Assembly: GCF_001194135.2 (NCBI RefSeq) | Contig: NC_068991.1 | Coordinates: 50,231,640 to 50,295,639, forward strand | Origin: Octopus bimaculoides | Taxonomy: Eukaryota | DNA: 64,000 nucleotides | Reading direction: 5' to 3' | Shown here: one piece after another, positions 14,091 to 49,112 of the stretch | Numbering within the stretch: the stretch's first letter is position 1 | How the letters are laid out: each line of letters begins with the position of its first letter | Position numbers and translations under genes: made by a program | The notes under the pieces: generated by a model | Seen by the model: the letters and a program-made list of their open reading frames with translations, nothing else | The model's database searches: none | What the model was told of the DNA's origin: nothing

Positions 14091-14529
14091 TTTTACTGTT
14101 TTCACACTTTCATTTGTTGTTATTTACCAAAATTTCATGGTCTTTTACTTAATATGAGTTGATATGTAACTTTGACAGCGAATATTTTCTTGTCTACAAC
14201 TCCATAGTTTGGCTGTATATTTCCGACTGATTTTCTCTCTTACCACTCTACAATATCTGAGCAACAGTTTTATATACGGATCCATCTCTACGAAGGAAAT
14301 ATACCAGCTGCAGCTAATCTCGCAAGACATATTGTCGATACTGATGCATAAATATTCGTGTATTAAAGCTGTAAACAATCTAATATGAAAATTAAAGTTA
14401 TTTTTAATGAAATCATGATTAACATAATTTATACAAGAATCGTAGTAGGAATAATTTTAAGAATTAAGTAAAAAAAAAATGTATCAATTATAACTGGATT
14501 GCCAGGTATAATATGCCGTCCCGGGAAGC

Positions 14530-14822
14530 ACAATAAAAAAAGTGTCAGGCCCCAATCCGTGTTATGATTATGGAAGCCTACAGTACAAAAAGGATTGTCC
14601 TTTTAAAAACAAGTGCTATAGCTGTCAGAAGCTGGGACACAGAAGTTCTCATTGTAGAACAAGAGCACGAGGCTCAAACACAAAAAGTTCTCAGGTGTTT
14701 TCAGCGGAGAGTGAATGCAACGGAAAAACAAGAAAATTCGTGCGCGTAAAAATAAATGATGTGAATACCAAATTACAGTTAGACACGGGTAGTGACATCT
14801 CGATTATAAATGCGGATTCTAA
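14530..14822 (+). pseudogene. Ty3/Gypsy gag zinc knuckles and aspartic protease remnant
   Basis: CYDYGSLQYKKDC and CYSCQKLGHRSSHC (CX2CX4HX4C), then VRVKINDVNTKLQLDTGSDISIIN (retropepsin LDTG). Truncated by (TA)n(GA)n at 14835-14946. Confidence 0.8.
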
Positions 14823-14831
14823 AATAAATGA

Positions 14832-15495
<664 letters not shown>

Positions 15496-15962
15496 TATAT
15501 TTTTNNNNNNNNNNNNNNNNNNNNNNNNNNNNNNNNNNNNNNNNNNNNNNNNNNNNNNNNNNNNNNNNNNNNNNNNNNNNNNNNNNNNNNNNNNNNNNNN
15601 NNNNNNNNNNNNNNNNNNNNNNNNNNNNNNNNNNNNNNNNNNNNNNNNNNNNNNNNNNNNNNNNNNNNNNNNNNNNNNNNNNNNNNNNNNNNNNNNNNNN
15701 NNNNNNNNNNNNNNNNNNNNNNNNNNNNNNNNNNNNNNNNNNNNNNNNNNNNNNNNNNNNNNNNNNNNNNNNNNNNNNNNNNNNNNNNNNNNNNNNNNNN
15801 NNNNNNNNNNNNNNNNNNNNNNNNNNNNNNNNNNNNNNNNNNNNNNNNNNNNNNNNNNNNNNNNNNNNNNNNNNNNNNNNNNNNNNNNNNNNNNNNNNNN
15901 NNNNNNNNNNNNNNNNNNNNNNNNNNNNNNNNNNNNNNNNNNNNNNNNNNNNNNNNNNNNNN

Positions 15963-16540
15963 GATACACGATAATCTCCACCTTATAGGCTATATCTTAG
16001 AAAGGGTAAATAAGATTCCTGGCAAAGGTTGGTTCATTTGATAGAGTAGCCTTTGATAGAGTAGACCATCTGGCGGCGGTCCTCGAGGCGGCCGGTTTTG
16101 GCGCGACATTCTGCGGCTGGATCAACGCTTTATATAGCAACATCAAGTCGATAGTTCAGCTGAACGGTTCCTTTTCGGAGCCGTTCAATATCGAACGCTC
16201 GGTTCGTCAAGGTTGTCCACTCTCGCCCCTGCTGTATGTATTGGTTCTCGAGCTACTACTGCCAAGATTGGAGGCTACGAGTGGAGATCCGCAAGATCTA
16301 GGGTATGGAAAGTCAGTCGCAGCATATACGGACAATATCACTGTCGTCGTATCTAGAGACCAGGACCTACAGAGGGTAGGTGAGGCCATGAAGGATTACG
16401 AAGCGGTGCCAGGAGCAAGAATTAATCGAGATAAGTCGGTGGGCATGTAGCTCGGCACCTGGAGAAGCAAAACAATGTCGTCCAACAGCGTTATCGGACG
16501 CTGGACAGACGGTTCGGTGAAAATGCATGGAGTCTGGTTT
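15963..16540 (+). pseudogene. L1/Tx1-clade reverse transcriptase fragment
   Basis: IHDNLHLIGYILERV, AFDRVDH.LAAVLEAAGFG..FCGWINALYS, SVRQGCPLSPLLYVLVLE, AAYTDNITV (decayed YADD), GARINRDKSVG. Confidence 0.9.
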
Positions 16541-18900: not shown

Positions 18901-19169
18901 NNNNNNNNNNNNNNNNNNNNNNNNNNNNNNNNNNNNNNNNNNNNNNNNNNNNNNNNNNNNNNNNNNNNNNNNNNNNNNNNNNNNNNNNNNNNNNNNNNNN
19001 NNNNNNNNNNNNNNNNNNNNNNNNNNNNNNNNNNNNNNNNNNNNNNNNNNNNNNNNNNNNNNNNNNNNNNNNNNNNNNNNNNNNNNNNNNNNNNNNNNNN
19101 NNNNNNNNNNNNNNNNNNNNNNNNNNNNNNNNNNNNNNNNNNNNNNNNNNNNNNNNNNNNNNNNNNNNN

Positions 19170-21647: not shown

Positions 21648-21935
21648 GNNNNNNNNNNNNNNNNNNNNNNNNNNNNNNNNNNNNNNNNNNNNNNNNNNNN
21701 NNNNNNNNNNNNNNNNNNNNNNNNNNNNNNNNNNNNNNNNNNNNNNNNNNNNNNNNNNNNNNNNNNNNNNNNNNNNNNNNNNNNNNNNNNNNNNNNNNNN
21801 NNNNNNNNNNNNNNNNNNNNNNNNNNNNNNNNNNNNNNNNNNNNNNNNNNNNNNNNNNNNNNNNNNNNNNNNNNNNNNNNNNNNNNNNNNNNNNNNNNNN
21901 NNNNNNNNNNNNNNNNNNNNNNNNNNNNNNNNNNN

Positions 21936-22292
21936 CTACTATGATAGGAATTGTTTCTGTTTTTAGATTCCACATTCGAGTTATCTCTATTTCCAGGTCT
22001 TTGTATTTTGAAAGTTTTTCCATTTCTTTTAGAGAAACGTTGTCATCTGCTGGTATTGATACATCAATTAGAAAGCATTTTTTTTCTTCATGATCTTTGA
22101 CAACTATATCTGGTCTATTTGCCTTAATTTCTCTATCTGTGTGTATTGGCATATCCCAGAGTATGGTTGCTTTCTCGTTTTCTGTGACCTTTTCTGGCGT
22201 GTGTTTATACCAACTTTTTTCTGTTGTTATTCCATAATGTTGGCATAGTTTCCAGTGTATATAGGTCCCAGCTCTGTCGTGTCTGTGAATCA
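21936..22292 (-). mobile_element. RLE-type non-LTR retrotransposon endonuclease domain (R4/Dong-like), frame intact up to the gap
   Basis: RHDRAGTYIHWKLCQHYGITTEKSWYKHTPEKVTENEKATILWDMPIHTDREIKANRPDIVVKDHEEKKCFLIDVSIPADDNVSLKEMEKLSKYKDLEIEITRMWNLKTETIPIIV. Confidence 0.9.
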
Positions 22293-22617
22293 GTTCCATG
22301 CGTATTTCTACCACTCCACTAGATGCGTCTACCAGAGGTGTGAGCTTCATTATCTTATGAAGGGGTAAAATTGTGTTGCTGTAAGATTTGCTTTGTTTCT
22401 AGTGTTAATTTTAATGCTTTGTCTGATTGTTAGGCAGAGAATAAGCTGTTCAAATTTTATGATGTATTTTAAGTGTCGGTCGTGATTGCGTCGAGTATGA
22501 GCGACATGGGTTGTGCTCTATGATTGGATAGCGATAGTGTGAAGTAGTGATTATTAGACTTGTTGTATGCAATATCAAAGAGTCGATAGGTTGAGATATG
22601 CTATTGAATGGTACTCA

Positions 22618-22735
22618 GTGGCTGTGTGGTAAGTAGCTTGCTTACCAACCACATGGCTCCGGTTTCNNNNNNNNNNAGGCGGTGCTCCAGCATGGCTGCT
22701 GTCAAATGACTGAAACAAGAAAAAGAGTAAAAGAG
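22618..22735 (+). mobile_element. SINE family B with an internal assembly gap
   Basis: GTGGCTGTGTGGTAAGTAGCTTGCTTACCAACCACATGG...AGGCGGTGCTCCAGCATGGC. Confidence 0.85.
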
Positions 22736-23979: not shown

Positions 23980-24155
23980 GTGGTGAGCTGTCAGAATCGT
24001 TAGCACGCTGGACGAAATGCTTAGCGGCATTTCAGCCGTCTTTACGTTCTGAGTTCAAATTCTGCTGAGGTCGATTTTACCTTTTATCTTTTCGGGGTCA
24101 TCGTCTTACACCCTCTCCCTAAATTGCTGGTCGTGTACCAAAAGTTGAAATCAAT
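23980..24155 (+). mobile_element. SINE family A
   Basis: GTGGTGAGCTGTCAGAATCGTTAGCACGCTGGACGAAATGCTTAGCGGC. Confidence 0.9.
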
Positions 24156-24460: not shown

Positions 24461-25267
24461 AGATGACAAAGAAAAAATATCCTATACCCGGTTAATATTA
24501 TTCTAGAGGTAAGATCGGCAGGTGTAATGTGAGAGAGTAGCTACAAATTCATTTACAGTTTTGAGATAAGGAAATTTTTATTTTGAGCGAAAGGTAGTTA
24601 TTGCTTAGTTTTCCCTGTCTCTGAGGAATTACTTTCTTTAACTTGAATTCTTAATACGTTTTGTCAGATTCGAATAGGAATATGCAAAAAGCTTCTGTAT
24701 TCGTCAATGGAGAACACACGTCGTCTGAAAGGAGAAGTTGTTGTTCAATGATAAAATACAGCAACGATTAGCATATTCACGTCCGAATCTGACAGAACGT
24801 ATTAAGAATGAATATGTAAGACATCGTTTTGATTTTCGCTGTTCACCGTGCACATAACGACTTGTTATTTCCAGGACATTCTCAAAAATGACAACATTTT
24901 ATGCTGTAAATATCACAAAGAGCAAATCGATCACATTCTTCGTTGTAGTTTGAGCAGGTTCATAAATATACAGAATAGACGTGGTACATCGAACAGATAT
25001 GAATACTAGAAAGATGCTAATGTTACAACACTGCTACATAAATCAACGCAAATATATATACAACAAACACATCACAGTTATATATTAACAGAGAATGTGG
25101 CTGTACAGAATGAATCAGAGATGAAAGTAAACTGTCATACATTTATATTTGTATAAAGGTAGTTCAATGTCAGCAAATGAAAATATCTTTTTTTTCTGAA
25201 GAAACTGTTTTAACATAAAAACGTGAAAATGAAGATACATAAAAATATGATAGTAAAAATGTATAAT

Positions 25268-25306
25268 GTGTGACTAGTTTTTTCATTTTCCAGGTAAGGT
25301 ATGTAA
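25268..25306 (+). promoter_or_regulatory. Candidate recursive splice site 2 (3'SS fused to tandem 5'SSs)
   Basis: GTGAC branch-like motif (A at 25273), then TTTTTTCATTTTCCAG|GTAAG|GTATGT with AG at 25292-25293 and a second donor at 25298/25299. Confidence 0.5.
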
Positions 25307-25516
25307 CACTGTTAACCTCATTCTGCAATGAATGTTTTTCCTCACATATTTTAGTCTAACCTAGTTCTTTGATATTCCAACTATTAAATATATATTAAAT
25401 ATTGATGCTGAGCGGCTCGTACCAGTTGTTTTTGGTTGGGGTTTTTTTTTTTTTTTTTTGTATCTTGTATCATTGAAAAATACTTTCTCTTGTCAATTTG
25501 CTATTGCTGCGAACGG

Positions 25517-25553
<37 letters not shown>

Positions 25554-26112
25554 GAATTCCTCCACGGATATCGGGGAGTGTTTCTAATGGAGTATTATAT
25601 ATTTTTACTTTTATGTTTTTATGTTAAAACTGTTTCTTCAGAAAAAAAGATATTTTCATTTGCTGACGTTGAAATAAGTTTATGCAAATATATGACAGTT
25701 TACTTTTATTTCAGATTCCTTCTATACAACCATGTTCTCTCTATTAATATAACTATGATGTCTTTAGTATTGTTTGTTGCATATACTTGCGATATCTGAT
25801 TTATGTCAGGGGCGTAACATTAGCCTCTTCCAAGTATCTATATCTACATTTTTGAGACATACCATATCTATTCAGTATTTTATAAGTCTGCTCAAACAAC
25901 AACGAAAAGAAATGTGATCAATATGCTCTTTATGATATTTACATCAAATTTTATCAATTTTTTAAGAACGTTCTTGAAAGAGTTCTTGGTAAACTACTGC
26001 ATTGTTTAAATATCAGCACATCAAGGTTTCTCACTTTTTAGAGCAGATATTTTATATTATTTGTATATCATAAGTTTATATTGTTAGTTTATATTATTAG
26101 TATGCGGGAAAA

Positions 26113-26325
26113 GCCAGCGAGCTGGCAGAATTGTTTGCGCGTCGGGCGAAATGCTTTGCGGTATTTCGTCTGACATTACGTTCTGAGTTCAAATTCCACC
26201 GAGATCGACTTTGCCTTTCATCCTCTTGTGGTTGATAAATTAAGTACCAGTAGCTCACTGGGGCCGATCTAATCGACTGACCTCCTTTCCCAAAAAATTT
26301 CAGGCCTTGAACCTATAGTAGAAAT
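26113..26325 (+). mobile_element. SINE family A
   Basis: GCCAGCGAGCTGGCAGAATTGTTTGCGCGTCGGGCGAAATGC...GTTCTGAGTTCAAATTCCACCGAG. Confidence 0.9.
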
Positions 26326-26769
26326 AATTTTTTTGTACGCTGGAATAACTGTAGAATGGGTCTACATGTAGAGTTGAAATTCTCACGAGATAAACATCAT
26401 CTTTTCCCCACCAACCGTATCAGTAATATACTAGGGTACACTCAGTAGACTTTATTCTATAAATTTATGAGAAAATGAGGGGCACTAATATTAGGGTAAA
26501 CCATTAAAGATGCTACCTTAGTGAGAGCTGCATTTTCTTGTCTTTTGTGAATCTGATATTTACTATATCAACCCTGCTCAGGTAAAATTAATAAAAATAC
26601 TACATTTCTGTTGTAAAATAAACTGCAAATAGAAAAAATATGTTGGTTAAGAAAGTCAAAAGATACAGTAATGCCAGCAAGATTTGACCTCATAAATAAA
26701 ATAACCAAATAGTAGAAGGAATTTTGGTTGGAACTCGAGCCTTTTAAATCGCCAAAACTATAGAGATAG

Positions 26770-32129: not shown

Positions 32130-34060
32130 TTATAAATTCAAATTTCTTTTCCGTGGTTTTTATAATTAAAAAGGTTACAAAGAACATCCTTACCCTAGTT
32201 CATTAACAATAATATCCGTCATATAAGGCAAAACATGAACGGATTACATTATAAAATCTACAGAGACTAACTAATAAACGTAAATGACTATTAAGATTTA
32301 TAATGGACATCGGACAATATTAGGATTTCGACGAACATAACTACCGAGTTAAAATGTGTCAATAAATTTACTTAAATGCTGAAGAGCAACCACTAGAGAA
32401 TTTATCTCTATCATAGTAGAAAAGGAAGTTGCCATTGTGTCTACGTTAATAGACAGACAAAACGCTATCTATAAGATTTCCAATCTCATAGCAAAACAAT
32501 CCTTTTTGTTTACATTTGACAACTAGCCGATAATTACGATTCAACTTCACTAATACTCGAATCACTGCATACATACGCATGTGTGTGTGTATCTGTTTAT
32601 ATATACATATACAGGAATATATACACTGACATATGCATATACACACACATTTACAGATGTAAACATGTATACGCATATACTAGTATACATATATATATGT
32701 GTGTGTATGTGTGTGTGTGTGTGCGCGCGCGCGTGCGCGCAGGAGTGGCTGCGTGGTAAGTACCTTGCTTACCAACTACATGGTTCCGGGTTCAGTCCCA
32801 CTGCGTGGCACCTTGGGCAAGTGTCTTCTACTATAGCCTCGGGCCGACCAAAGCCTTGTGAGTGGATTTGTTAGACGGAAACTGAAAGAAGCCCGTCGTA
32901 TATATGTATGTATATATATATATATATATATATATNNNNNNNNNNNNNNNNNNNNNNNNNNNNNNNNNNNNNNNNNNNNNNNNNNNNNNNNNNNNNNNNN
33001 NNNNNNNNNNNNNNNNNNNNNNNNNNNNNNNNNNNNNNNNNNNNNNNNNNNNNNNNNNNNNNNNNNNNNNNNNNNNNNNNNNNNNNNNNNNNNNNNNNNN
33101 NNNNNNNNNNNNNNNNNNNNNNNNNNNNNNNNNNNNNNNNNNNNNNNNNNNNNNNNNNNNNNNNNNNNNNNNNNNNNNNNNNNNNNNNNNNNNNNNNNNN
33201 NNNNNNNNNNNNNNNNNNNNNNNNNNNNNNNNNNNNNNNNNNNNNNNNNNNNNNNNNNNNNNNNNNNNNNNNNNNNNNNNNNNNNNNNNNNNNNNNNNNN
33301 NNNNNNNNNNNNNNNNNNNNNNNNNNNNNNNNNNNNNNNNNNNNNNNNNNNNNNNNNNNNNNNNNNNNNNNNNNNNNNNNNNNNNNNNNNNNNNNNNNNN
33401 NNNNNNNNNNNNNNNNNNNNNNNNNNNNNNNNNNNNNNNNNNNNNNNNNNNNNNNNNNNNNNNNNNNNNNNNNNNNNNNNNNNNNNNNNNNNNNNNNNNN
33501 NNNNNNNNNNNNNNNNNNNNNNNNNNNNNNNNNNNNNNNNNNNNNNNNNNNNNNNNNNNNNNNNNNNNNNNNNNNNNNNNNNNNNNNNNNNNNNNNNNNN
33601 NNNNNNNNNNNNNNNNNNNNNNNNNNNNNNNNNNNNNNNNNNNNNNNNNNNNNNNNNNNNNNNNNNNNNNNNNNNNNNNNNNNNNNNNNNNNNNNNNNNN
33701 NNNNNNNNNNNNNNNNNNNNNNNNNNNNNNNNNNNNNNNNNNNNNNNNNNNNNNNNNNNNNNNNNNNNNNNNNNNNNNNNNNNNNNNNNNNNNNNNNNNN
33801 NNNNNNNNNNTATATATATACTTGCACAAATACATAAACTTCATTATACGAACTCATAACGCAAACATATGTACAAACGTATGTGTATATGTCTATTATA
33901 AATAATCTTGTTAGAAATATTTCGCTGCGAATAACTAAATTATCAGCAAATGAAGAAATATTTAATAATAGTGTAACGAAGCACTGGTGTAAAAGTGGAT
34001 TTAATGCAAACAGAATATTCCTCGCCATGAACAAGGAAGCCATACCGTGAAGATAAACAC
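32130..34060 (+). pseudogene. Penelope-like element RT C-terminal remnant, split by microsatellite, SINE B and a gap
   Basis: Weak left part at ~32130-32500 (IMDIG..DF, YVN). The right part at 33901-34010 reads NNLVRNISLRITKLSANEEIFNN, matching the PLE motif I..RLS.LS.NE.IFN. Confidence 0.45.
32741..32899 (+). mobile_element. SINE family B (5' module), tail running into (TA)n and a gap
   Basis: AGGAGTGGCTGCGTGGTAAGTACCTTGC...GGTTCCGGGTTCAGTCCCACTGCGTGGCACCTTGGGCAAGTG. Confidence 0.95.
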
Positions 34061-34149: not shown

Positions 34150-35270
34150 TGGTATACACGATACTAAACCTGCAATGCTAGCGATTATGGAATTACAATA
34201 AGGGGACATTGATAAAATAAAACGATAACATTCCTTACTACTGGTCAAGGATAAATGATTGATATGGCAATAAATAGACCTTGGAGACAAAAAGAGAATG
34301 AAGAAAACTACTATTACGGCAAAAAATAGGAATTCTATGGTCGGTGTTGTTCAACTAGTTAACAGCGATAGTGCTACGACGGTATTCAATAATAGAAGAA
34401 CCTAAATTCTACGCTTAGAATAATGTAAGATCAAACAGGAACCTTCCACCCTAAGAATGACAACGATAGGCTGCACTTGTTCAGAAGAAAGGCTGAAAGA
34501 GATTTAATCAGTTTCCGGGACTGTATCGAAGCAGAGGGAAACAACCTAGGATGGTATATAAAAAATGCAGGAGAGCCACTGTTGAAATACACAAAGAAAG
34601 CCGGCGTCATCAACTCTGAAAATTGTGTAACTAAAGAAAAATTTAAACAAGAAATGAACAAAAAAAAAGAAAAAAGAAAAAGCATGGAAGAAAAAATGTA
34701 CGGTCAGTTTGCAAGAGATGTGAACGCCAAGACAGACACAGAGAACCGGTAGCTATGGATCAGGAGGAGTGACCTGAAGATAGAAACAGATGCACTCATA
34801 TGCGCAGCTCAGGAACAAGAGTTAGGGACCAACTATATGAAATGCAGAATAACAACACTACTGACAGTGACAAACGCAAAATAAATGATGAGAGGGATGA
34901 AACGGTATGGCACATCGTTAGCGAATGCCCGAAATTGGCACAACGCGAATACAAAAGACGCCATGACAATATGGCAGGAATGATCCATTGGGAGCTCTGT
35001 CAAAATCATAGCCTACAAAGTGCAAAGGCGTGTTATGAGCAAACACCAGGAGTCACCGAAATGAGAATTGCAAAATCCTCTGGGATGCAATGATCCAGTG
35101 CAATCACCCGACCAGACATCGGAAACCAGACATTGTTGTGGTGAATAAAGAACAAAGAAAATGTATGATAATCGACATAGCATGCTCCGGTAACAACAGG
35201 ATCAATGTGAAAGAAGAATAACCGATAGTTATGAAGCACAGAAACTTTAAAAATTGCAAAAAAAGACATT
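34150..35270 (+). mobile_element. RLE-type non-LTR retrotransposon (R4/Dong-like): RT thumb, CCHC and endonuclease, frameshifted
   Basis: LHPKNDNDRLHLFRRKAERDLIS, KMYGQF, WIRRSDLKIETDALICAAQEQ, ETVWHIVSECPKLAQREYKRRHD..IHWELC, KILWDAMIQCNH..RHRKPDIVVVNK. Confidence 0.9.
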
Positions 35271-40275: not shown

Positions 40276-40504
40276 ATGTGTGTGTGTGTGTGTGTGCGTG
40301 TGTGTAAATCATTTGCTGTTAGTAGCGCTAGGAAAGGATGAGACAGGCTTTCTTTTATTACTGACATTAAAAACTTCAAAATTTTTATCATTTCACAGGA
40401 TGTGCATGCGTACACTGCTGCTGCTGCTGTTGTTGTTGTTGTTCTCGTTACTGTTGTTTGCCTTACCTCGTCATGGTTCGAGCTGATATTAGTGCATTCT
40501 GTAA

Positions 40505-40905
40505 GGCGGCGAGCTGGCAGAATCGTCAGGGCGAAATGCTTAGCGATATTTTGTCTGTCGCTACGTTCTGAGTTCAAATTCCGCCGAGGTCGATTTTACC
40601 TTTCATCCTTCCGGGGTCGATTAAATAAGTACCTGTTACGCACTGGGGTCGATGTAATCGACTTAATCCCTTTGTCCCCTCTATGTTTAGCCCTTTGTGG
40701 GCAATAAAGAAATAAGAATCGTTAGTACGCTGGACGAAATGTTTAACGGTTTTCGCCTGTCGCTACGTTCTGAGTTCAAATTCCGCCATGGTTGACTTTA
40801 CCCTTCATCCTTTCGGGGTCGATGAATTAAGTAGTAGTGGAACAGGGGTCGATGTTATCGACTTGTCCCCTAGCCCAACAAATTTCAGGTCTTGTGCCTT
40901 TAGTA
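40505..40905 (+). mobile_element. Head-to-tail pair of SINE family A copies
   Basis: Full copy at 40505-40715, and a 5'-trimmed second copy from AAGAATCGTTAGTACGCTGGACG. Confidence 0.9.
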
Positions 40906-42009
40906 AAAAGGATATTAGTGCATTTTGTCAACAAACCATATTTTTTTACTTTTTTTGAAATACCGCTAAGCATTTGTTTTTTACTTGTTTTATATACTGT
41001 AGTATATTCATTTAAGTTACTCGAAGGTGAGCAGGTCTATGACTTGAAAAAAAAATCTTCGGTTGAATGCAAACACAAAGAGAATTGACAAACATTCCAG
41101 AAAAGACAAACCTTTAGTTCTCACCGTTATGTGAGAGGTTTACGAAATCCAGAATTTCTCAGATGACATTAATTGAAGAATTACAGCTAAGTTCTTAATT
41201 GTGCTTGATTTAAATAGCTATTTTCTTCAAGTTTTCTCTATGACAAAGAAATGAAAGCCTACTTCAACTCTCATGAATGATCAACGTACCGTGAAAAACA
41301 ATCTCTTTGAAAAGTGAGGCCATAAAAGAATTCTTTACATCTGTTTTCACATTTGCTTAAAGTGCCACAGAAGACAATTTAATGTGTATAGTTTACTTGA
41401 TTTAAATTTAACTTTGAGTTTTAAAACAAAAGGTCTGGGTTTTTTTGTTTTTGCTTTTGTTTTTGCTTTTGTTTTTCTTTTTTTTTTTGCAGTCATGCTT
41501 GGTAAATATCCAATGTGCAGAACGATGAATCGCTCATCTTACGTCAAATCCAAAGCAAAATGATTTCGCCTGTGTAGGGGGAATAATAATTTTTAAAATG
41601 TTGTAGTAGTAGTAGTAGTAGAAGAAGAAAGAGGAAGAGGAGAAGGTGGAGGGGTGGATCAGGAAGAGCAGCAGCAGCAGTAGTAGTAGTAGTAGGTGGT
41701 GGGGATATGGTGTCTGTATTTAGTTTGTACCGAAACTGTCTGATATTCTTGTATCGTAGAAGCCAAGGAATCTATTAATTATCAATCAAATATTTTTTTT
41801 TTTCAAAGTAAATAATATTCAAATAATGAGCAAACGGTGGAATTTAAAGTGCTAATTTGATTTTTAATTTGTATTGATCCAATTACGTTGTAACGGCGAA
41901 GCTGAAATGTTAAAACTTCAATAAAATTGCAGTAACTACGTTGCTGACTAATTCAGTGAGATGATGGTAGTGAATAGAATGATCCATCGGGACACCGTGG
42001 TTCGATGGA

Positions 42010-43141: not shown

Positions 43142-44460
43142 TGAGGTGGTATCAAAAAGTTCCAGGACCAGTTTTGTAGCGCACCAACAGATGACAGCAC
43201 ACGGCTGCTTGCGCAGGGAGAGCTAGCAGTGACGTTCATGAGGTAGTGTGCTAAGTGACATCGCTGTGTTTACTTCGCAAGTTGTGAAATTTGTGTTTGT
43301 GATCACGTGTATGTTGTAATCTGCGATTTTGTCATGAACAAGAAGTTGGAACAAGGAATCAACGTGAAATCTTGCATTAAACTTGGGATGTCTGCTACAG
43401 AGACATTGAGCATGCTTCAACAAGATTACGGCGACGTGGCTATGGGTTGTATGCAATGTTTCGAGTGGTACGGGTGCATCAAAAGTGGAACAATGTCCCT
43501 GGGAAGATGATAAGCGATCTGGAAGACCTGCCAGGAGTGTTACCCCCGGAAATATGGAGACAATTTATCAGCTTGTGCATGAGGATCTTTGAAAGAAAAT
43601 CAACGACATTGCTGATGTTGTTGGTCTGTCATATGGGTCCGTGTATGCAATCCTAACGTATGAATTGAACTTGCGGCGTGTCTCTGCCAAGTTTGCTTCT
43701 CGCCCGCTGACCACTGAGCAGGAGGAACAAAGTCTGTCAAGAACTCCATCAGTGTGCCTCTCATAAATTATCCTTCGTGTCGAGGATAATCACCGGTGAC
43801 GAGAGTAGGGTCTACGGGTACGACCCTGAGACGAAACAGCAGTCGTTACAATAGAAGAGCCCTTCATCTCTGCGACCGAAGAAGGCACGACAGAGTCGCA
43901 GCTCAATCAAGAGCATGGTCATCGTTTTTCTTTTTTTTTTTAGACATCCGCGGTATTGTGCATCGAAAGTTCGTCCCCTAGAGTCAGACGAGATTTAATC
44001 GAGAATTCTACAGCGACGTTTTGAAGCGTCTGAGGGAGGACATTTGGCGAAAGCGACCGGATCTGCGAAGCTCAAAGGATTAGATTCTTCACGACAACAA
44101 TGCACCTTGTCGCTGATCTCTTCCTCAGTCGTGAGTTTCTCGCCAAAAACAACATGGTATTGCTTCCGCACCCGCCCTATTCGTCAGATTTAGCACCTTC
44201 GGACTTCCATTTCTTCCCGAAGCTGAAAATGCAACTCAAAGGTCGCTGTTTTAACACCGTTGTCAAGATCGAGAACAAATCACCTATTGTCCTCGACTCA
44301 TTTGCGGAAAATGATTTCCGGGCCGGATTCCAAAAGTGAAAGGAATGTTGGGACTGGTGTATTGCTGCGCAAGATGACTATTTCGAAGAAGACTATGTTA
44401 AAACTTAGGTAAATAAGTTATTTTTTATTAAACATAACTAGTCCGGAAACTTTTCGATAC
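43142..44460 (+). mobile_element. Mariner (DD34D-type) transposon, near full length, inactive
   Basis: TA followed by TIR TGAGGTGGTATCAAAAAGTTCCAGGAC; the right TIR GTCCGGAAACTTTTCGATAC runs into a gap. Transposase reads EQGINVKSCIKLGMSATETLSML, DDKRSGRP, ITGDESRVYGYDPETKQQS, LHDNNA, LPHPPYSSDLAPSDFHFFPKLK, with stops and frameshifts. Confidence 0.95.
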
Positions 44461-46296
44461 NNNNNNNNNNNNNNNNNNNNNNNNNNNNNNNNNNNNNNNN
44501 NNNNNNNNNNNNNNNNNNNNNNNNNNNNNNNNNNNNNNNNNNNNNNNNNNNNNNNNNNNNNNNNNNNNNNNNNNNNNNNNNNNNNNNNNNNNNNNNNNNN
44601 NNNNNNNNNNNNNNNNNNNNNNNNNNNNNNNNNNNNNNNNNNNNNNATATATATATATATAACGCGCATACATACAAACAAATATATATATATATACACA
44701 TATAATATACGCGCGTGCGCGTGTGTGTACATATATGTACCCATATTCCTCCAGACGCTTTTTAAACCTACCCATTGATTAAGAAGATATTTTGACTGAT
44801 GACTTTATTCACGTGGAAATGATATTTCGACTTGGCAATGGGTGATCACTCGGAATTATTGCACAGAATCCTTAAGAAAACACACACAACGTTAAAATAA
44901 TTATGCCTTTAATTAATGTGGTTTATTAGCTGAAAAAAATACTTCAAAGGATATGAATGAAAATGCAAGCTTAGGTGTAGTAGAGAAAAAGGATTATAAT
45001 TAAAAAGCTAATTTAAGAAGTTAATTACGGCTTTGTAACAAACTTTTGATGATGGCGTTGATGTAGACACCCTTCATCAAAGCTGACAGAGTTCACCCCC
45101 AGGAAAGTTATTCTATAACCATAAATTATGTTACTTTTGGTGTAAGATTATGTTAATCACCGAATTTAATGACTAACCTCTGATATTCAAGTGCTCTGGT
45201 TCTAGTTCCTTCACTGCATCGAAATAACACCTCGTATTCTAAAGTCTTTACTGCTGATTTAGTTTTTTTACCCGCGAAACAAATACAAGGAACATCATCA
45301 GAAGAAAAAATATTGTAGAACACCGGATTTAAAGACAACGTTATAGTATTTAGAGTTGTTATAAATTGCTGTTTCAAGTTCCAGTGTGATCAGCTTTGTT
45401 TCTCAACCCTCCCTCATTCGGAATGTATTGATATAATACCATTAGACTTTATAATACCGCTTGTATTTATGCACATCACTGCTTAGTGCTGTCTCCCTGT
45501 ATTTTATTTACAGCAAGCCGCTGAATAGTATAACTAGTATAACTAGTATAACAGTGACGGGAATATCATAAGAGGGGTCTATCTCTTGGGTCAGTTTGCA
45601 GTGTCTACCTTTCCGATGTCTGTTGCAGCAGAGGAGATAACCACTCCGAAATGCATACATTTAACAGTCTGGTTAGGGATCACTTTGAACTCACTCGGTG
45701 TATTTACGCCTATTTGTCTACAGTGAGAAATTTTCTCCTTGACAAAACACAGTGAATAGCTTTCTTGCAGGTTTGAATATGCCTCAGGTATATTTAAACT
45801 GGTAAAAAGTTTGTATTATATACATCACTATTTAGCGCTGTTACCTCGTCATACCTCTAATATACTGGCGGTATTTAATAGATTTCATTCTGTCCAACAA
45901 TCGTTTACTTTGTCTCAAATAAAGTAAATATGTAATTGCCTGCTTGGTGGTTTGTGGACGTCTTATGTTTGTGTGTTCATGTGTATATGTATGTGCCTAT
46001 GTGTGTTTACACGTACGCGTGTCTGTGTATGTGATATAGTCTTCATGTTACACAATCAAGTAATCTTCAAGCCTTAGAAAAACATTATTCAGATTAAACT
46101 TTTCGATCACTTAAAAATATGTTTGGGACATATCTAACCTGAAAATAGATCATTTTTACTGCGGTTTGCCATGGAGATACTCGCTAGAATTTTTCGTCAC
46201 TGCAATACTACTTTGCATGCCAACCATGTTTATGTTAAGATCAATTCCAAAGTAATTTTAGCCTCAAGTAAGTTTTTAATATTAGTCTCTATTAAA

Positions 46297-46511
46297 GCGG
46301 AGAGCTGGCAGAATCGTTAGCAAGCCGGGCAAAATGCTCAGCGGTATTTCGTCCGTCTTTATAATTCTTAGTTCAAATTCCGCCGAGGTCGATTTTACCT
46401 TTCATCATTCCGGGGATGATAAAATAGGTACCAGTTGAGAACTGGTGTCGATATAATCGACTTATCCCCTCCTCAAAGTTGGTGGCCTTGTGCCACAATT
46501 TGAAACCAATC
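46297..46511 (+). mobile_element. SINE family A
   Basis: GCGGAGAGCTGGCAGAATCGTTAGCAAGCCGGGCAAAATGCTCAGCGGTATTTCG. Confidence 0.9.
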
Positions 46512-47085: not shown

Positions 47086-47367
47086 ATATATATANNNNNN
47101 NNNNNNNNNNNNNNNNNNNNNNNNNNNNNNNNNNNNNNNNNNNNNNNNNNNNNNNNNNNNNNNNNNNNNNNNNNNNNNNNNNNNNNNNNNNNNNNNNNNN
47201 NNNNNNNNNNNNNNNNNNNNNNCAATACCAAGTGAAGTGTATCTGGATTCAAGTGAAACTTGATGTTTTGCAATTTAATTTATGTTTGCATCTTGAGATT
47301 TCACCCATATTATTTGGTCGTTATTTCCGTCGTGACTGTTTTTATAAAATGTTGCCCATCTCTTTAA

Positions 47368-47990: not shown

Positions 47991-49112
47991 AATTGCTTTT
48001 GTTTTTGATTCTTATTGAAATTGATTTTCTTTAAAGAAATCAATAACTGACAAATTTCCTTTCTAATTCCAATTCTGCTGCTTATAAACGAAAAATCGTC
48101 CTTAAACTTTCATTTAATGCCATTATAAAGTATTCTCTGCTCACTACTTTCCCGAAGATACCAGAAAAGAATATTTTGCTGGAATATAAGAATAAAAGAA
48201 TATTCAGCACATTGCTTGCTTTAAATTATGATTTTTTTTAAAAATCTTTATCGACCACATAATTTTATGAACTCTTTCAAAATCTTATACTAATCACATA
48301 AATAGTGATTTGAGCGCATTAAATCTTTTATATTATATTNNNNNNNNNNNNNNNNNNNNNNTATATATATATATATTCAGAGGGTGGGGAGAGAGAGATG
48401 CTGTGATAGATACACCACTATATCGTATCCACAGATAGATGGAGGTGAACAAAGATATGTAGACAGAGACACCTTAGACTATTATATTTAATCAGCTTTC
48501 AAAGAAAAATTCAAACCAAATTAGAAATTATATATTTTATATAATCTAATTTCGGTAAAATAGATATAACTTGAAAATATTAAAAATACATTAATGCCAG
48601 AGTGCCAGGACAGTGTATAAGTTACGCATAGTCTTCACTCTTTTATATTCTTCATTTCTGTTGTTCAAAAAAAGATTCTAAATCATGATATAAATGCCAT
48701 TTGTTTCGGCTTTGTGGGATAATGCAATACGTACAGCTTCATAAATATTTCATATTCTACATATGGCTGTGGAAAATTTATTGATAGGATTACTTTACGG
48801 GAATAACGAAATGCTATCACACTAGCAAACCTCTTCTGAAGTCTGGTTTATGGCAACAGAAATGAATATTTCTAAATTGCTTAGCAAAAATACTGTGTTG
48901 CCTTTCATTACCAATATAATCGAAGATATAATCCTGGAAATGAAAAGAACCAGATTAGTCTGAAAGCGATTTCAAATCTTTTGCTAGAAATGTTTTAAAG
49001 CTTACCAGCATTCTGAATTAAAACTGTTTTCCGCATTAGACGGAATCAGGAATGCGAGCTAACGGGTTTCGAATATGCCAAATTATCATAACGAAGTGTT
49101 GGAAGCATATTT

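What the first reader, a model, noticed from the sequence alone, without database searches (positions are those of the whole stretch)
25265..25310. Second AG|GTAAG site with tandem donors (5-nt exon GTAAG, then GTATGT)
The sequence reads GTGACTAGTTTTTTCATTTTCCAG|GTAAG|GTATGTAA. It has a branch-like TGAC 20 nt upstream, 12 of 13 pyrimidines before CAG, an immediate GTAAG donor and a second consensus donor AAG|GTATGT five nucleotides later. Inference: competition between the two donors would give either a zero-nucleotide recursive event or inclusion of a 5-nt frameshifting microexon, which could act as an on/off splicing switch.
Basis: partly seen in the sequence, partly recalled or inferred. 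Interest (0 to 1): 0.72.

Follow-up and report, generated by a model that had tools for sequence, protein, structure and literature searches.

The report
Splice-site look-alike in octopus DNA
A short stretch of octopus non-coding DNA really does look like a textbook 'recursive' splice site with two overlapping donor sites, and it is somewhat better than chance predicts, but nothing available here shows that it is transcribed, conserved or used, so it remains an untested candidate that is most likely a chance look-alike.

Summary
The sequence is exactly as described. A branch-like TGAC (25271-74) precedes a tract with 12 of 13 pyrimidines, then CAG|GTAAG|GTATGT, with the AG at 25292-93.

It is the best acceptor-plus-donor juxtaposition in the window: 20.0 bits on a textbook matrix. 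A second site, 18.2 bits, lies 21 kb upstream on the same strand at 4237. One such site is expected by chance in about 1 window-strand in 20. A same-strand pair has P about 0.01. This is suggestive, not decisive.

The window is octopus-like, rich in repeats and transposon remnants, with 11 assembly gaps. I found no coding exon, so the host gene and transcribed strand are unknown.

The motif lies in the unique spacer of a 1.1-kb inverted duplication. It is not part of any repeat I could detect. No good donor lies 10-250 nt downstream, so the short exon that known recursive sites use for recognition is missing. GTAAG|GTATG is simply a 5-nt tandem duplication with one mismatch.

RNA-seq and orthologous octopus introns could not be reached. 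My estimates:
- chance, unselected motif: about 0.55
- real recursive site: about 0.30
- the proposed 5-nt frameshift switch: about 0.04

If real, it would be a new member of a known kind.

The parts
25271..25274 (+). Branch-point-like TGAC. The A is at 25273, 20 nt upstream of the acceptor G.
   Evidence: Read directly. It matches 4 of 5 positions of yUnAy. This is a weak feature, because such matches are common.
25278..25290 (+). Pyrimidine tract TTTTTTCATTTTC (12 of 13 Y), with TT at -6/-5 relative to the junction.
   Evidence: The acceptor part scores 7.6 bits, the 99.7th percentile of all + strand AG sites.
25291..25293 (+). CAG acceptor-like trinucleotide. The putative junction follows 25293.
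   Evidence: The combined acceptor+donor score is 20.0 bits, the best in the window.
25294..25299 (+). Donor-like site 1, GTAAGG. It would be the regenerated recursive donor.
   Evidence: CAG|GTAAGG scores 8.2 bits, the highest donor score of all GT on the + strand.
25299..25304 (+). Donor-like site 2, AAG|GTATGT, 5 nt downstream. Its U1 footprint overlaps that of donor 1.
   Evidence: It scores 5.4 bits, the 99.6th percentile. GTAAG+GTATG is a 5-nt tandem repeat with one mismatch, read directly from the sequence.
24868..25247 (.). Left arm of a 1.1-kb inverted duplication.
   Evidence: BLAST gives about 75% identity over 398 aligned columns to 25595-25979 on the opposite strand. No target-site duplication was found.
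25248..25593 (.). Unique 346-nt spacer of the inverted duplication. It holds the motif, which starts about 25 nt inside, and two T runs (T19 at 25442-25460, T33 at 25519-25551).
   Evidence: The spacer has no match elsewhere in the window or in 41 kb of other octopus DNA.
25594..25979 (.). Right arm of the inverted duplication.
   Evidence: As RNA, 24925-25924 folds into one long hairpin at -349 kcal/mol, against -192 +/- 6 for shuffles.
4214..4280 (+). Companion recursive-like site, TTTTTATTTTCTTTTATATTGCAG|GTAAGA, with its junction after 4237. Strong donors follow at +28 (4266) and +37 (4275). It lies 21,056 nt upstream on the same strand.
   Evidence: It scores 18.2 bits, second best in the window. 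It has TT at -6/-5. Its flanks share no homology with those of 25293.

Best explanation
Most likely this is an unselected splice-site look-alike in repeat-rich, non-coding octopus DNA. A T-rich tract happens to end in CAG and is followed by GTAAG. A 5-nt tandem duplication, GTAAG to GTAAG-GTATG, created the second donor. It sits in the unique spacer of an old inverted duplication flanked by SINE copies. On this reading it has no dedicated function. If the + strand is transcribed through it, it could at most be used occasionally as a cryptic site.

Shown: the sequence, its score, its repeat context, and the lack of a downstream exon-defining donor. Inferred: the lack of function.
For: - A site of this quality is expected about once per 20 window-strands (0.05 expected on +). 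That implies roughly 2,000-3,000 chance sites of at least 20 bits in a 2.7-Gb genome (my extrapolation).
- Looser versions occur 0.25-0.4 times per strand per window.
- No coding exon or host gene was detected. The 70 most protein-like unique ORFs had no relative among 5.8 billion proteins. No splice-flanked open exon was found on +. The only domains found are transposon domains.
- The neighbourhood is neutral-looking: an inverted duplication at 75% identity, SINE copies at 23985-24088 and 26111-26332, and long T runs.
- Known recursive sites start with definition of a short exon by a donor typically tens of nt downstream (PMC8605326; PMC6224609). Here no GT at +10 to +250 has a positive donor score.
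- Donor-like motifs cluster within 100 nt in control strands too: about 5% of strong donors outside tandem arrays.
- SINEs (10 of 13) and most retroelement ORFs lie in sense on the + strand. This is not what mammalian sense-strand introns show, but it is weak evidence and uncalibrated for octopus.
Against: - The site is the single best acceptor+donor juxtaposition among 306 AGGT in the window. The second best lies on the same strand 21 kb away, a spacing typical of Drosophila recursive segments (mean 18 kb; 10.1101/006163).
- P for such a same-strand pair is about 0.01 under nulls that keep the real pyrimidine tracts.
- No site of at least 18 bits occurs in about 325 kb of control strand.
- Both sites carry TT at -6/-5, and both are followed by another top-1% donor within 40 nt.
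- The two sites share no flanking homology, so they are independent.
- The motif is not in a detectable dispersed repeat.
Confidence: 0.55

Rival explanations
1. This is a genuine intronic recursive splice site (ratchet point). The window lies in a long intron of a + strand gene. The upstream exon is first spliced to 25294, which regenerates a donor (exon|GTAAGG). That donor is then used to remove the next intron segment, leaving no trace in the mRNA. Site 4237 would be the preceding ratchet point of the same intron.
For: - It has the top combined acceptor+donor score in the window, 20.0 bits. The partner at 4237 scores 18.2 bits on the same strand, 21,056 nt away, with pair P about 0.01.
- Controls reach at most 17.1 bits.
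- TT at -6/-5, found in 99.5% of Drosophila ratchet points, is present at both sites (10.1101/006163).
- Site 4237 has donors at +28 and +37, the canonical short-exon layout (PMC8605326).
- The absence of detectable exons in 64 kb is compatible with a very long intron.
- Recursive splicing exists in both insects and vertebrates (PMC6110457; PMC6224609).
Against: - There is no evidence that the region is transcribed, or on which strand.
- There are no conservation data.
- At 25293 the only downstream donors are at +5 and a weak one at +9, so the exon-definition step known from flies and vertebrates has no obvious substrate.
- The held literature has no report of recursive splicing in cephalopods.
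- The statistics partly rest on choices made after seeing the sites.
- No further strong site lies in the 39 kb downstream.
Confidence: 0.3
2. After splicing into 25294, the two overlapping donors compete. Use of GT 25294 gives a zero-nucleotide event. Use of GT 25299 includes the 5-nt exon GTAAG, shifts the reading frame and acts as a regulated on/off switch.
For: - Both donors are strong, at 8.2 and 5.4 bits, and both are in the top 0.4% of + strand GT sites.
- Their U1 binding sites overlap, so binding is mutually exclusive. This follows from established U1-donor pairing.
- An internal donor 6 nt into a recursive exon gave a 6-nt microexon in a reporter after the first splicing step (PMC6224609).
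- A 4-nt exon is constitutively spliced in human MPC1 (PMC9929638).
- Tandem splice sites 2-12 nt apart are widespread (PMC2878309).
Against: - Everything that counts against the recursive-site rival applies here too.
- In the reporter work a further canonical downstream donor was needed to define the exon for the first step. None exists here.
- Nothing shows that the host intron interrupts a coding sequence, or that the choice is regulated.
- The second donor is most simply a 5-nt slippage duplication, with about a 0.6% chance for that offset given GTAAG.
- The acceptor has no UGC-type microexon enhancer motif upstream.
Confidence: 0.04
3. This is an ordinary, non-recursive splice signal of an unannotated transcript. 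Either CAG|GTAAGG is the donor of a non-coding or UTR exon that ends at 25293, or the acceptor opens a cryptic or poison exon or a short intron.
For: The acceptor part and the donor part are each in the top 1% of their class in the window. A moderate acceptor lies 60 nt downstream at 25354 (3.6 bits).
Against: - No open reading frame runs on either side, and stops occur within 21 codons in all frames downstream.
- No partner splice site of comparable strength lies within 600 nt.
- The sequence upstream of 25293 is a pyrimidine tract, which is atypical for an exon end.
Confidence: 0.06
4. The motif is carried by a mobile or dispersed element, for example a foldback-type element made of the two inverted arms plus the spacer. 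It would then be repeated across the genome for reasons unrelated to host splicing.
For: The motif lies inside a structure with 380-nt inverted arms. The window is dense in SINEs and transposon fragments.
Against: - There is no second copy of the arms or spacer in the 64-kb window or in 41 kb of O. sinensis and O. bimaculoides DNA.
- No target-site duplication was found.
- There are no exact matches in metagenome contigs.
- ORFs across the spacer have no relatives.
- The sample of octopus DNA is too small to exclude families of low or moderate copy number.
Confidence: 0.05

Closest known systems
Drosophila intronic ratchet points (zero-nucleotide recursive splice sites; Hatton 1998, Burnette 2005, Duff 2015, Joseph 2018)
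   Same: A long pyrimidine tract, TT at -6/-5, and a CAG|GTAAG juxtaposition. A second such site lies about 21 kb away on the same strand, within the range of recursive segment sizes (mean 18 kb, 2.6-64 kb; 10.1101/006163).
   Different: Fly ratchet points are defined by junction and lariat reads, by strong conservation, and by a cryptic exon of about 50 nt with its own downstream donor (PMC8605326). None of these is shown here. The nearest further donor is only 5 nt away. The organism is a mollusc, where the mechanism has not been reported in the literature I could search.
Vertebrate recursive exons and EJC-repressed cryptic microexons (Sibley 2015; Blazquez 2018, PMC6224609)
   Same: The idea is the same: after the first splice, the regenerated donor competes with a donor a few nt downstream. 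Use of the latter inserts a microexon, 6 nt in the KPNA1 reporter.
   Different: There the internal donor lies inside a normal-length exon whose canonical donor drives exon definition. Here there is no such exon or donor. EJC behaviour in cephalopods is unknown.
Tandem donor sites (GYNGYN and other 2-12-nt tandem sites; PMC1779574, PMC2878309)
   Same: Two consensus GT donors lie a few nucleotides apart with overlapping U1 registers.
   Different: Known cases sit at the ends of real exons and mostly differ by 3 nt, which preserves the frame. Here the offset is 5 nt and no exon is known.
Ultra-short microexons (for example the 4-nt MPC1 exon, PMC9929638)
   Same: They show that exons of 3-5 nt can be spliced.
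   Different: Such exons depend on strong flanking definition elements and are conserved parts of coding sequences. Neither property is known here.

Membership tests
Recursive splice site (ratchet point) | Juxtaposed strong acceptor and donor consensus around AG|GT. | tested here: met
   The site scores 20.0 bits on a textbook matrix, the best of 306 AGGT in the window. The acceptor part is at the 99.7th percentile, and the donor part is the top-scoring GT on +.
Recursive splice site (ratchet point) | TT at positions -6/-5 (99.5% of Drosophila ratchet points). | tested here: met
   TT is present at 25288-25289, and also at the companion site 4237 (10.1101/006163). This hallmark comes from flies and has not been calibrated for molluscs.
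Recursive splice site (ratchet point) | Located in a long intron, on the sense strand of a transcribed gene. | tested here: inconclusive
   No exon or host gene was detectable in the window. That is compatible with either a very long intron or intergenic DNA. The strand could not be established.
Recursive splice site (ratchet point) | A further donor less than 100 nt downstream that defines a short cryptic exon (about 50 nt in flies). | tested here: inconclusive
   A strong donor exists at +5 and a weak one at +9, but none with a positive score from +10 to +250. The literal criterion of less than 100 nt is met. An exon long enough for exon definition is not present.
Recursive splice site (ratchet point) | Sequence conservation of the motif in related species, above that of the flanking intron. 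| not testable with these tools
   No orthologous cephalopod DNA could be retrieved. The collections hold prokaryotic, viral and metagenomic DNA. Octopus DNA was reachable only by protein look-up, and no annotated protein maps to the window.
Recursive splice site (ratchet point) | Junction reads, a sawtooth nascent-RNA profile or recursive lariats. | not testable with these tools
   No RNA-seq access.
Tandem donor / recursive microexon switch | Two usable donors within 15 nt of the junction, both with consensus quality. | tested here: met
   CAG|GTAAGG scores 8.2 bits and AAG|GTATGT scores 5.4 bits, 5 nt apart. Whether either is used is untested.
Dispersed repeat / transposable element | Additional copies elsewhere in the genome, terminal repeats with a target-site duplication. 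| tested here: not met
   The only match is the paired inverted arm. No copy is found elsewhere in the window or in 41 kb of O. sinensis and O. bimaculoides DNA, and there is no target-site duplication. The sample is small, so low-copy families are not excluded.
U1 snRNA gene or pseudogene on the - strand (the reverse complement of a perfect donor resembles the U1 5' end), or another structured RNA | A match to an Rfam covariance model. | tested here: not met
   No Rfam hit at gathering score in the window, and none at E<=1 in 24700-26100. The local 96-nt hairpin is not significant, with z = -1.2.

The most novel reading that the evidence does not exclude
Sites 4237 and 25293 are two ratchet points of one very long octopus intron. 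To my knowledge, and in the literature I could search, recursive splicing has not been described in a mollusc. At 25293 the regenerated donor competes with an overlapping donor 5 nt downstream, so the same site either vanishes without trace or inserts a 5-nt frameshifting exon without needing a conventional recursive exon.
Probability: 0.04. Interest if true: 0.65.

Novelty: not a real feature. Interest (0 to 1): 0.3.

Why it matters
Cephalopod genomes have many very long introns in neural genes, and how these are removed accurately is not known.

If these sites were used, recursive splicing would extend from insects and vertebrates to molluscs. A recursive site with a 5-nt 'exon' would also challenge the current view that a short exon of tens of nucleotides is needed to recognise such sites.

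As it stands, the value of the finding is practical. It gives two concrete coordinates and a simple score. With stranded total RNA-seq and the published octopus assemblies, these would let anyone test within a day whether octopus uses recursive splicing at all. If the test is negative, the site is one of a few thousand chance look-alikes expected per genome.

Tried and rejected
- **Dispersed repeat.** Self-BLAST of 24800-26100 found only the inverted partner arm. BLAST against 41 kb of O. sinensis and O. bimaculoides DNA found only the neighbouring SINE and microsatellites. Exact-pattern scans of metagenome contigs for the motif and for the arm core gave 0 hits.
- **ORFs across the locus.** ORF 25365-25796 had no relatives among 5.8 billion proteins. 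The ORF across the motif, 25173-25355 on the - strand, gave only spurious hits to an internally repetitive protein.
- **Transposon with terminal inverted repeats.** No target-site duplication was found.
- **U1-like or other RNA gene.** Rfam found none and there are no tRNAs.
- **Pre-miRNA-like local hairpin around the motif.** z = -1.2, so not significant.
- **Intron inside a hairpin-RNA gene.** The idea was a donor at 25294 with an acceptor at the edge of the right arm. No strong acceptor lies there; the best downstream ones are 25354 (3.6 bits) and 26046 (4.9 bits).
- **Host-gene search.** Pfam on 10 long ORFs found only transposon domains. A 4,088-aa concatenate of the 70 most protein-like unique ORFs had no hit. 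Ten ATG-to-stop ORFs are not in the 15-billion-protein collection. A splice-aware exon scan found nothing on + and one SINE-derived candidate on -.
- **More octopus background DNA.** ENA locus L003 turned out to be from an unrelated organism.
- **Common origin of the two sites.** Flanks of 4237 and 25293 show no homology; the alignment score was 25, against 23.4 +/- 3.2 for shuffles.
- **An over-optimistic null.** The block-wise order-1 Markov null gave P = 0.003 for the top site and under 0.0005 for the second. It destroys real T runs, so I relied on the empirical nulls instead.

Full report
**1. The observation**

One search shows window 25270-25307 (+) as GTGACTAGTTTTTTCATTTTCCAG|GTAAG|GTATGTAA. 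The parts are:
- TGAC at 25271-25274, with its A 20 nt before the acceptor G
- 12 of 13 pyrimidines at 25278-25290
- CAG at 25291-25293
- GTAAG at 25294-25298
- AAG|GTATGT, with the second GT at 25299

It is the second of three AGGTAAG on the + strand (4236, 24507, 25292); the - strand has one. GTAAG followed by GTATG is also a 5-nt tandem repeat with one mismatch. That is the simplest origin of the 'tandem donors'.

**2. What kind of DNA this is**

- The window has 31-35% G+C, 11 runs of N (assembly gaps) and abundant microsatellites.
- A reverse-transcriptase ORF at 16010-16447 (Pfam RVT_1, E = 9e-14) has its best named relatives in Octopus sinensis (57%), Acanthosepion pharaonis (50%) and O. 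bimaculoides (42%).
- Dispersed repeats in the window match a 20-kb piece of an O. sinensis chromosome at up to 96% identity.
- The O. bimaculoides locus I fetched has variable-length N gaps like those in the window.

So the 'coleoid' premise holds: this is an octopus-type genome. Besides the reverse transcriptase there are other transposon remnants:
- a weak Mos1-type HTH match at 43259-43507 and a gag-like zinc knuckle at 14512-14997
- a four-member transposon ORF family
- 13 copies of a SINE-like repeat

**3. The immediate surroundings**

The motif lies about 25 nt inside the unique 346-nt spacer of a 1.1-kb inverted duplication. The arms are 24868-25247 and 25594-25979, about 75% identical. 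The spacer also holds a T19 run and a T33 run.

- As RNA the region would fold into one long hairpin: -349 kcal/mol, against -192 +/- 6 for shuffles.
- The motif would sit in a weak local stem that is not better than chance, z = -1.2.
- There is no target-site duplication.
- No other copy of the arms or spacer occurs in the window or in 41 kb of other octopus DNA.
- There are no exact matches in metagenome contigs.
- ORFs across the locus have no relatives.
- No Rfam family matches.

SINE copies flank the structure at 23985-24088 and 26111-26332.

**4. Is it more than chance?**

Patterns written after seeing the site look rare: YYYYNCAGGTAAG has 0.04 expected. That comparison is circular, so I used three definitions fixed from the literature.

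(a) *Loose definition: YAG|GTRAG with at least 10 of 15 upstream pyrimidines.* Two sites occur on the + strand (4237 and 25293) and none on the - strand. One occurs in 82 kb of control strands. Markov and block-wise nulls expect 0.25-0.4 per strand, giving P(+>=2) = 0.03-0.07.

(b) *A textbook acceptor (-20..-1) plus donor (+1..+6) log-odds matrix, scored at every AGGT.* The results:
- 25293: 20.0 bits, the best of 306 sites on both strands
- 4237: 18.2 bits
- third best on the + strand: 13.7 bits
- best on the - strand: 15.3 bits
- the two other octopus loci: at most 15.9 bits
- reversed and complemented control strands: at most 17.1 bits, in a CT microsatellite

(c) *Nulls for (b).* An order-1 block-wise Markov null gives P = 0.003 for the top site and under 0.0005 for the second. 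It destroys real T runs, so it is too optimistic. An empirical null combines the real upstream scores of all AG with the real downstream scores of all GT. It expects 0.05 sites of at least 20 bits and 0.15 sites of at least 18.2 bits on the + strand, so P(>=2) = 0.010. Stratifying by 2-8-kb blocks gives 0.010-0.013.

Conclusions from the statistics:
- A single site like this turns up about once per 20 window-strands. That means a few thousand such sites per 2.7-Gb genome (my extrapolation).
- A same-strand pair is about a 1% event.
- The two sites share no flanking homology, so they are independent.
- Both carry TT at -6/-5, which 99.5% of fly ratchet points do, and they are 21,056 nt apart. 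Fly recursive segments average 18 kb (10.1101/006163).
- Both are followed within 40 nt by another donor in the top 1% of all GT sites.
- Strong donor-like motifs also cluster in control strands, at about 5% outside tandem arrays.

The statistics are suggestive. They are not decisive, and they rest partly on choices made after seeing the data.

**5. Gene context**

Recursive splicing requires a long intron transcribed from the + strand. I could not establish this.
- The long ORFs carry only transposon domains.
- A concatenate of the 70 most protein-like, non-repeat ORFs (4,088 aa) found nothing among 5.8 billion proteins, which include the annotated O. sinensis and O. bimaculoides proteomes.
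- Ten ATG-to-stop ORFs are not in the collection.
- A scan for open frames bounded by strong acceptor and donor motifs found none on + and one SINE-derived candidate on -.

This fits either a very long intron or intergenic DNA. Short or untranslated exons would have been missed. SINE copies are 10:3 in sense on the + strand, and four of six retroelement ORFs are on +. In mammals, sense-strand introns tend to show the opposite bias. I give this little weight, because it is not significant and is uncalibrated for octopus.

**6. Mechanism**

Current understanding is that recursive splicing begins with definition of a short exon that starts at the ratchet point and ends at its own donor. This exon is about 50 nt in flies, and most fly sites have a donor less than 100 nt downstream. 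After the first ligation, the regenerated donor competes with that downstream donor (PMC8605326; PMC6224609).

Blazquez et al. also showed that a donor placed 6 nt into such an exon is used after the first step and yields a 6-nt microexon. In that experiment the canonical downstream donor was still needed for the first step.

It is not a new principle.

At 25293 the only GT sites with a positive donor score within 250 nt are at +0 (8.2 bits) and +5 (5.4 bits). Nothing there can define a normal-length exon. Recognition would have to work across 5 nt. That is not impossible, since a 4-nt exon is constitutively spliced in MPC1 (PMC9929638), but such exons need strong special context. Site 4237, by contrast, has donors at +28 and +37 and looks canonical. 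The two donors at 25294 and 25299 have overlapping U1 footprints, so mutually exclusive use is a sound inference if the acceptor is used at all.

**7. Weighing**

- *For chance:* the base rate of such motifs, the neutral-looking repeat context, no detectable gene, no exon-defining donor, and a trivial origin for the second donor.
- *For a real recursive site:* the best score in the window, a same-strand partner at a typical distance with a canonical layout, the TT hallmark, and absence from repeats.

A rough Bayesian estimate depends heavily on how common recursive splicing is in octopus, which is unknown. I found no report of it in the held literature. My estimates are:
- unselected look-alike: about 0.55
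- genuine recursive site: about 0.30
- the specific 5-nt frameshift switch: about 0.04
- ordinary splice signal of an unannotated transcript: about 0.06
- motif carried by a repeat: about 0.05

**8. Comparison with what is known, and novelty**

The site works like, or would work like, a Drosophila ratchet point or a vertebrate recursive exon with an internal donor.

| Membership feature | Result |
|---|---|
| Juxtaposed consensus | met |
| TT at -6/-5 | met |
| Downstream exon-defining donor | inconclusive (only +5) |
| Long sense-strand intron | inconclusive |
| Conservation | not testable here |
| Junction or lariat reads | not testable here |

I therefore do not file it as a recursive splice site. 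If it were confirmed, it would be a new member of a known kind in a new phylum. The 5-nt version would be a new variant.

As a functional element it is unproven, and more likely than not it is not real. The decisive tests are simple and are listed under next steps: annotation look-up, stranded total RNA-seq, cross-species alignment, and a sense-versus-antisense census.

Noticed in passing
window 4214-4280 (+): A companion recursive-like site, TTTTTATTTTCTTTTATATTGCAG|GTAAGA, has its junction after 4237 and scores 18.2 bits. Strong donors follow at +28 (ACG|GTAAGC) and +37 (AAG|GTAAAT). This layout is closer to a canonical ratchet point plus short cryptic exon than the site at 25293.
   Followed up: partly
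window 24868-25979: A 1.1-kb inverted duplication has arms of about 380 nt at about 75% identity and a 346-nt spacer containing T19 and T33 runs. As RNA it would form a very long hairpin (-349 kcal/mol, z = -24). No target-site duplication or other copies were found. Its origin is unknown: a local inverted duplication, a foldback element or a hairpin-RNA locus.
   Followed up: partly
window 5215-59170 (13 places, e.g. 23985-24088, 26111-26332, 40503-40909, 46302-46470): A SINE-like dispersed repeat is shared with O. sinensis and O. bimaculoides loci at 75-86% identity. Ten copies are in one orientation (sense on +) and three in the other.
   Followed up: partly
window 10726-11316 (+), 21936-22350 (-), 34773-35218 (+), 59224-59757 (+): Four diverged copies of one ORF family (30-56% identity to one another) have no Pfam match. 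They are probably the C-terminal part of a retroelement protein.
   Followed up: partly
window 16010-16447 (+); 43259-44336 (+); 14512-14997 (+): Transposon remnants: a reverse-transcriptase fragment (RVT_1) truncated by an assembly gap, a frameshifted mariner/Mos1-like transposase (weak HTH_48 match), and a gag-like zinc-knuckle ORF running into a microsatellite.
   Followed up: partly
window 32737-32919; L001 18600-20400: This stretch is 94-96% identical to a tandem array of about 87 nt in the O. sinensis locus. In the window it abuts the 875-nt N gap at 32936-33810, so a satellite array probably caused the gap.
   Followed up: no
whole window: There is a strand asymmetry. Donor-like motifs of at least 5 bits number 21 on + and 8 on -, and G exceeds C on + over most of the window (mean skew about +0.04). 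GT-rich microsatellites explain part of this. Whether it reflects transcription is unknown.
   Followed up: no
window 9403-10111, 15505-15962, 18901-19169, 21649-21935, 22667-22676, 32936-33810, 44461-44646, 47095-47222, 48340-48361, 51763-51936, 61225-61842: Eleven assembly gaps of variable length total 3,736 N, mostly next to microsatellites. Any feature hidden in them, exons included, could not be assessed.
   Followed up: no
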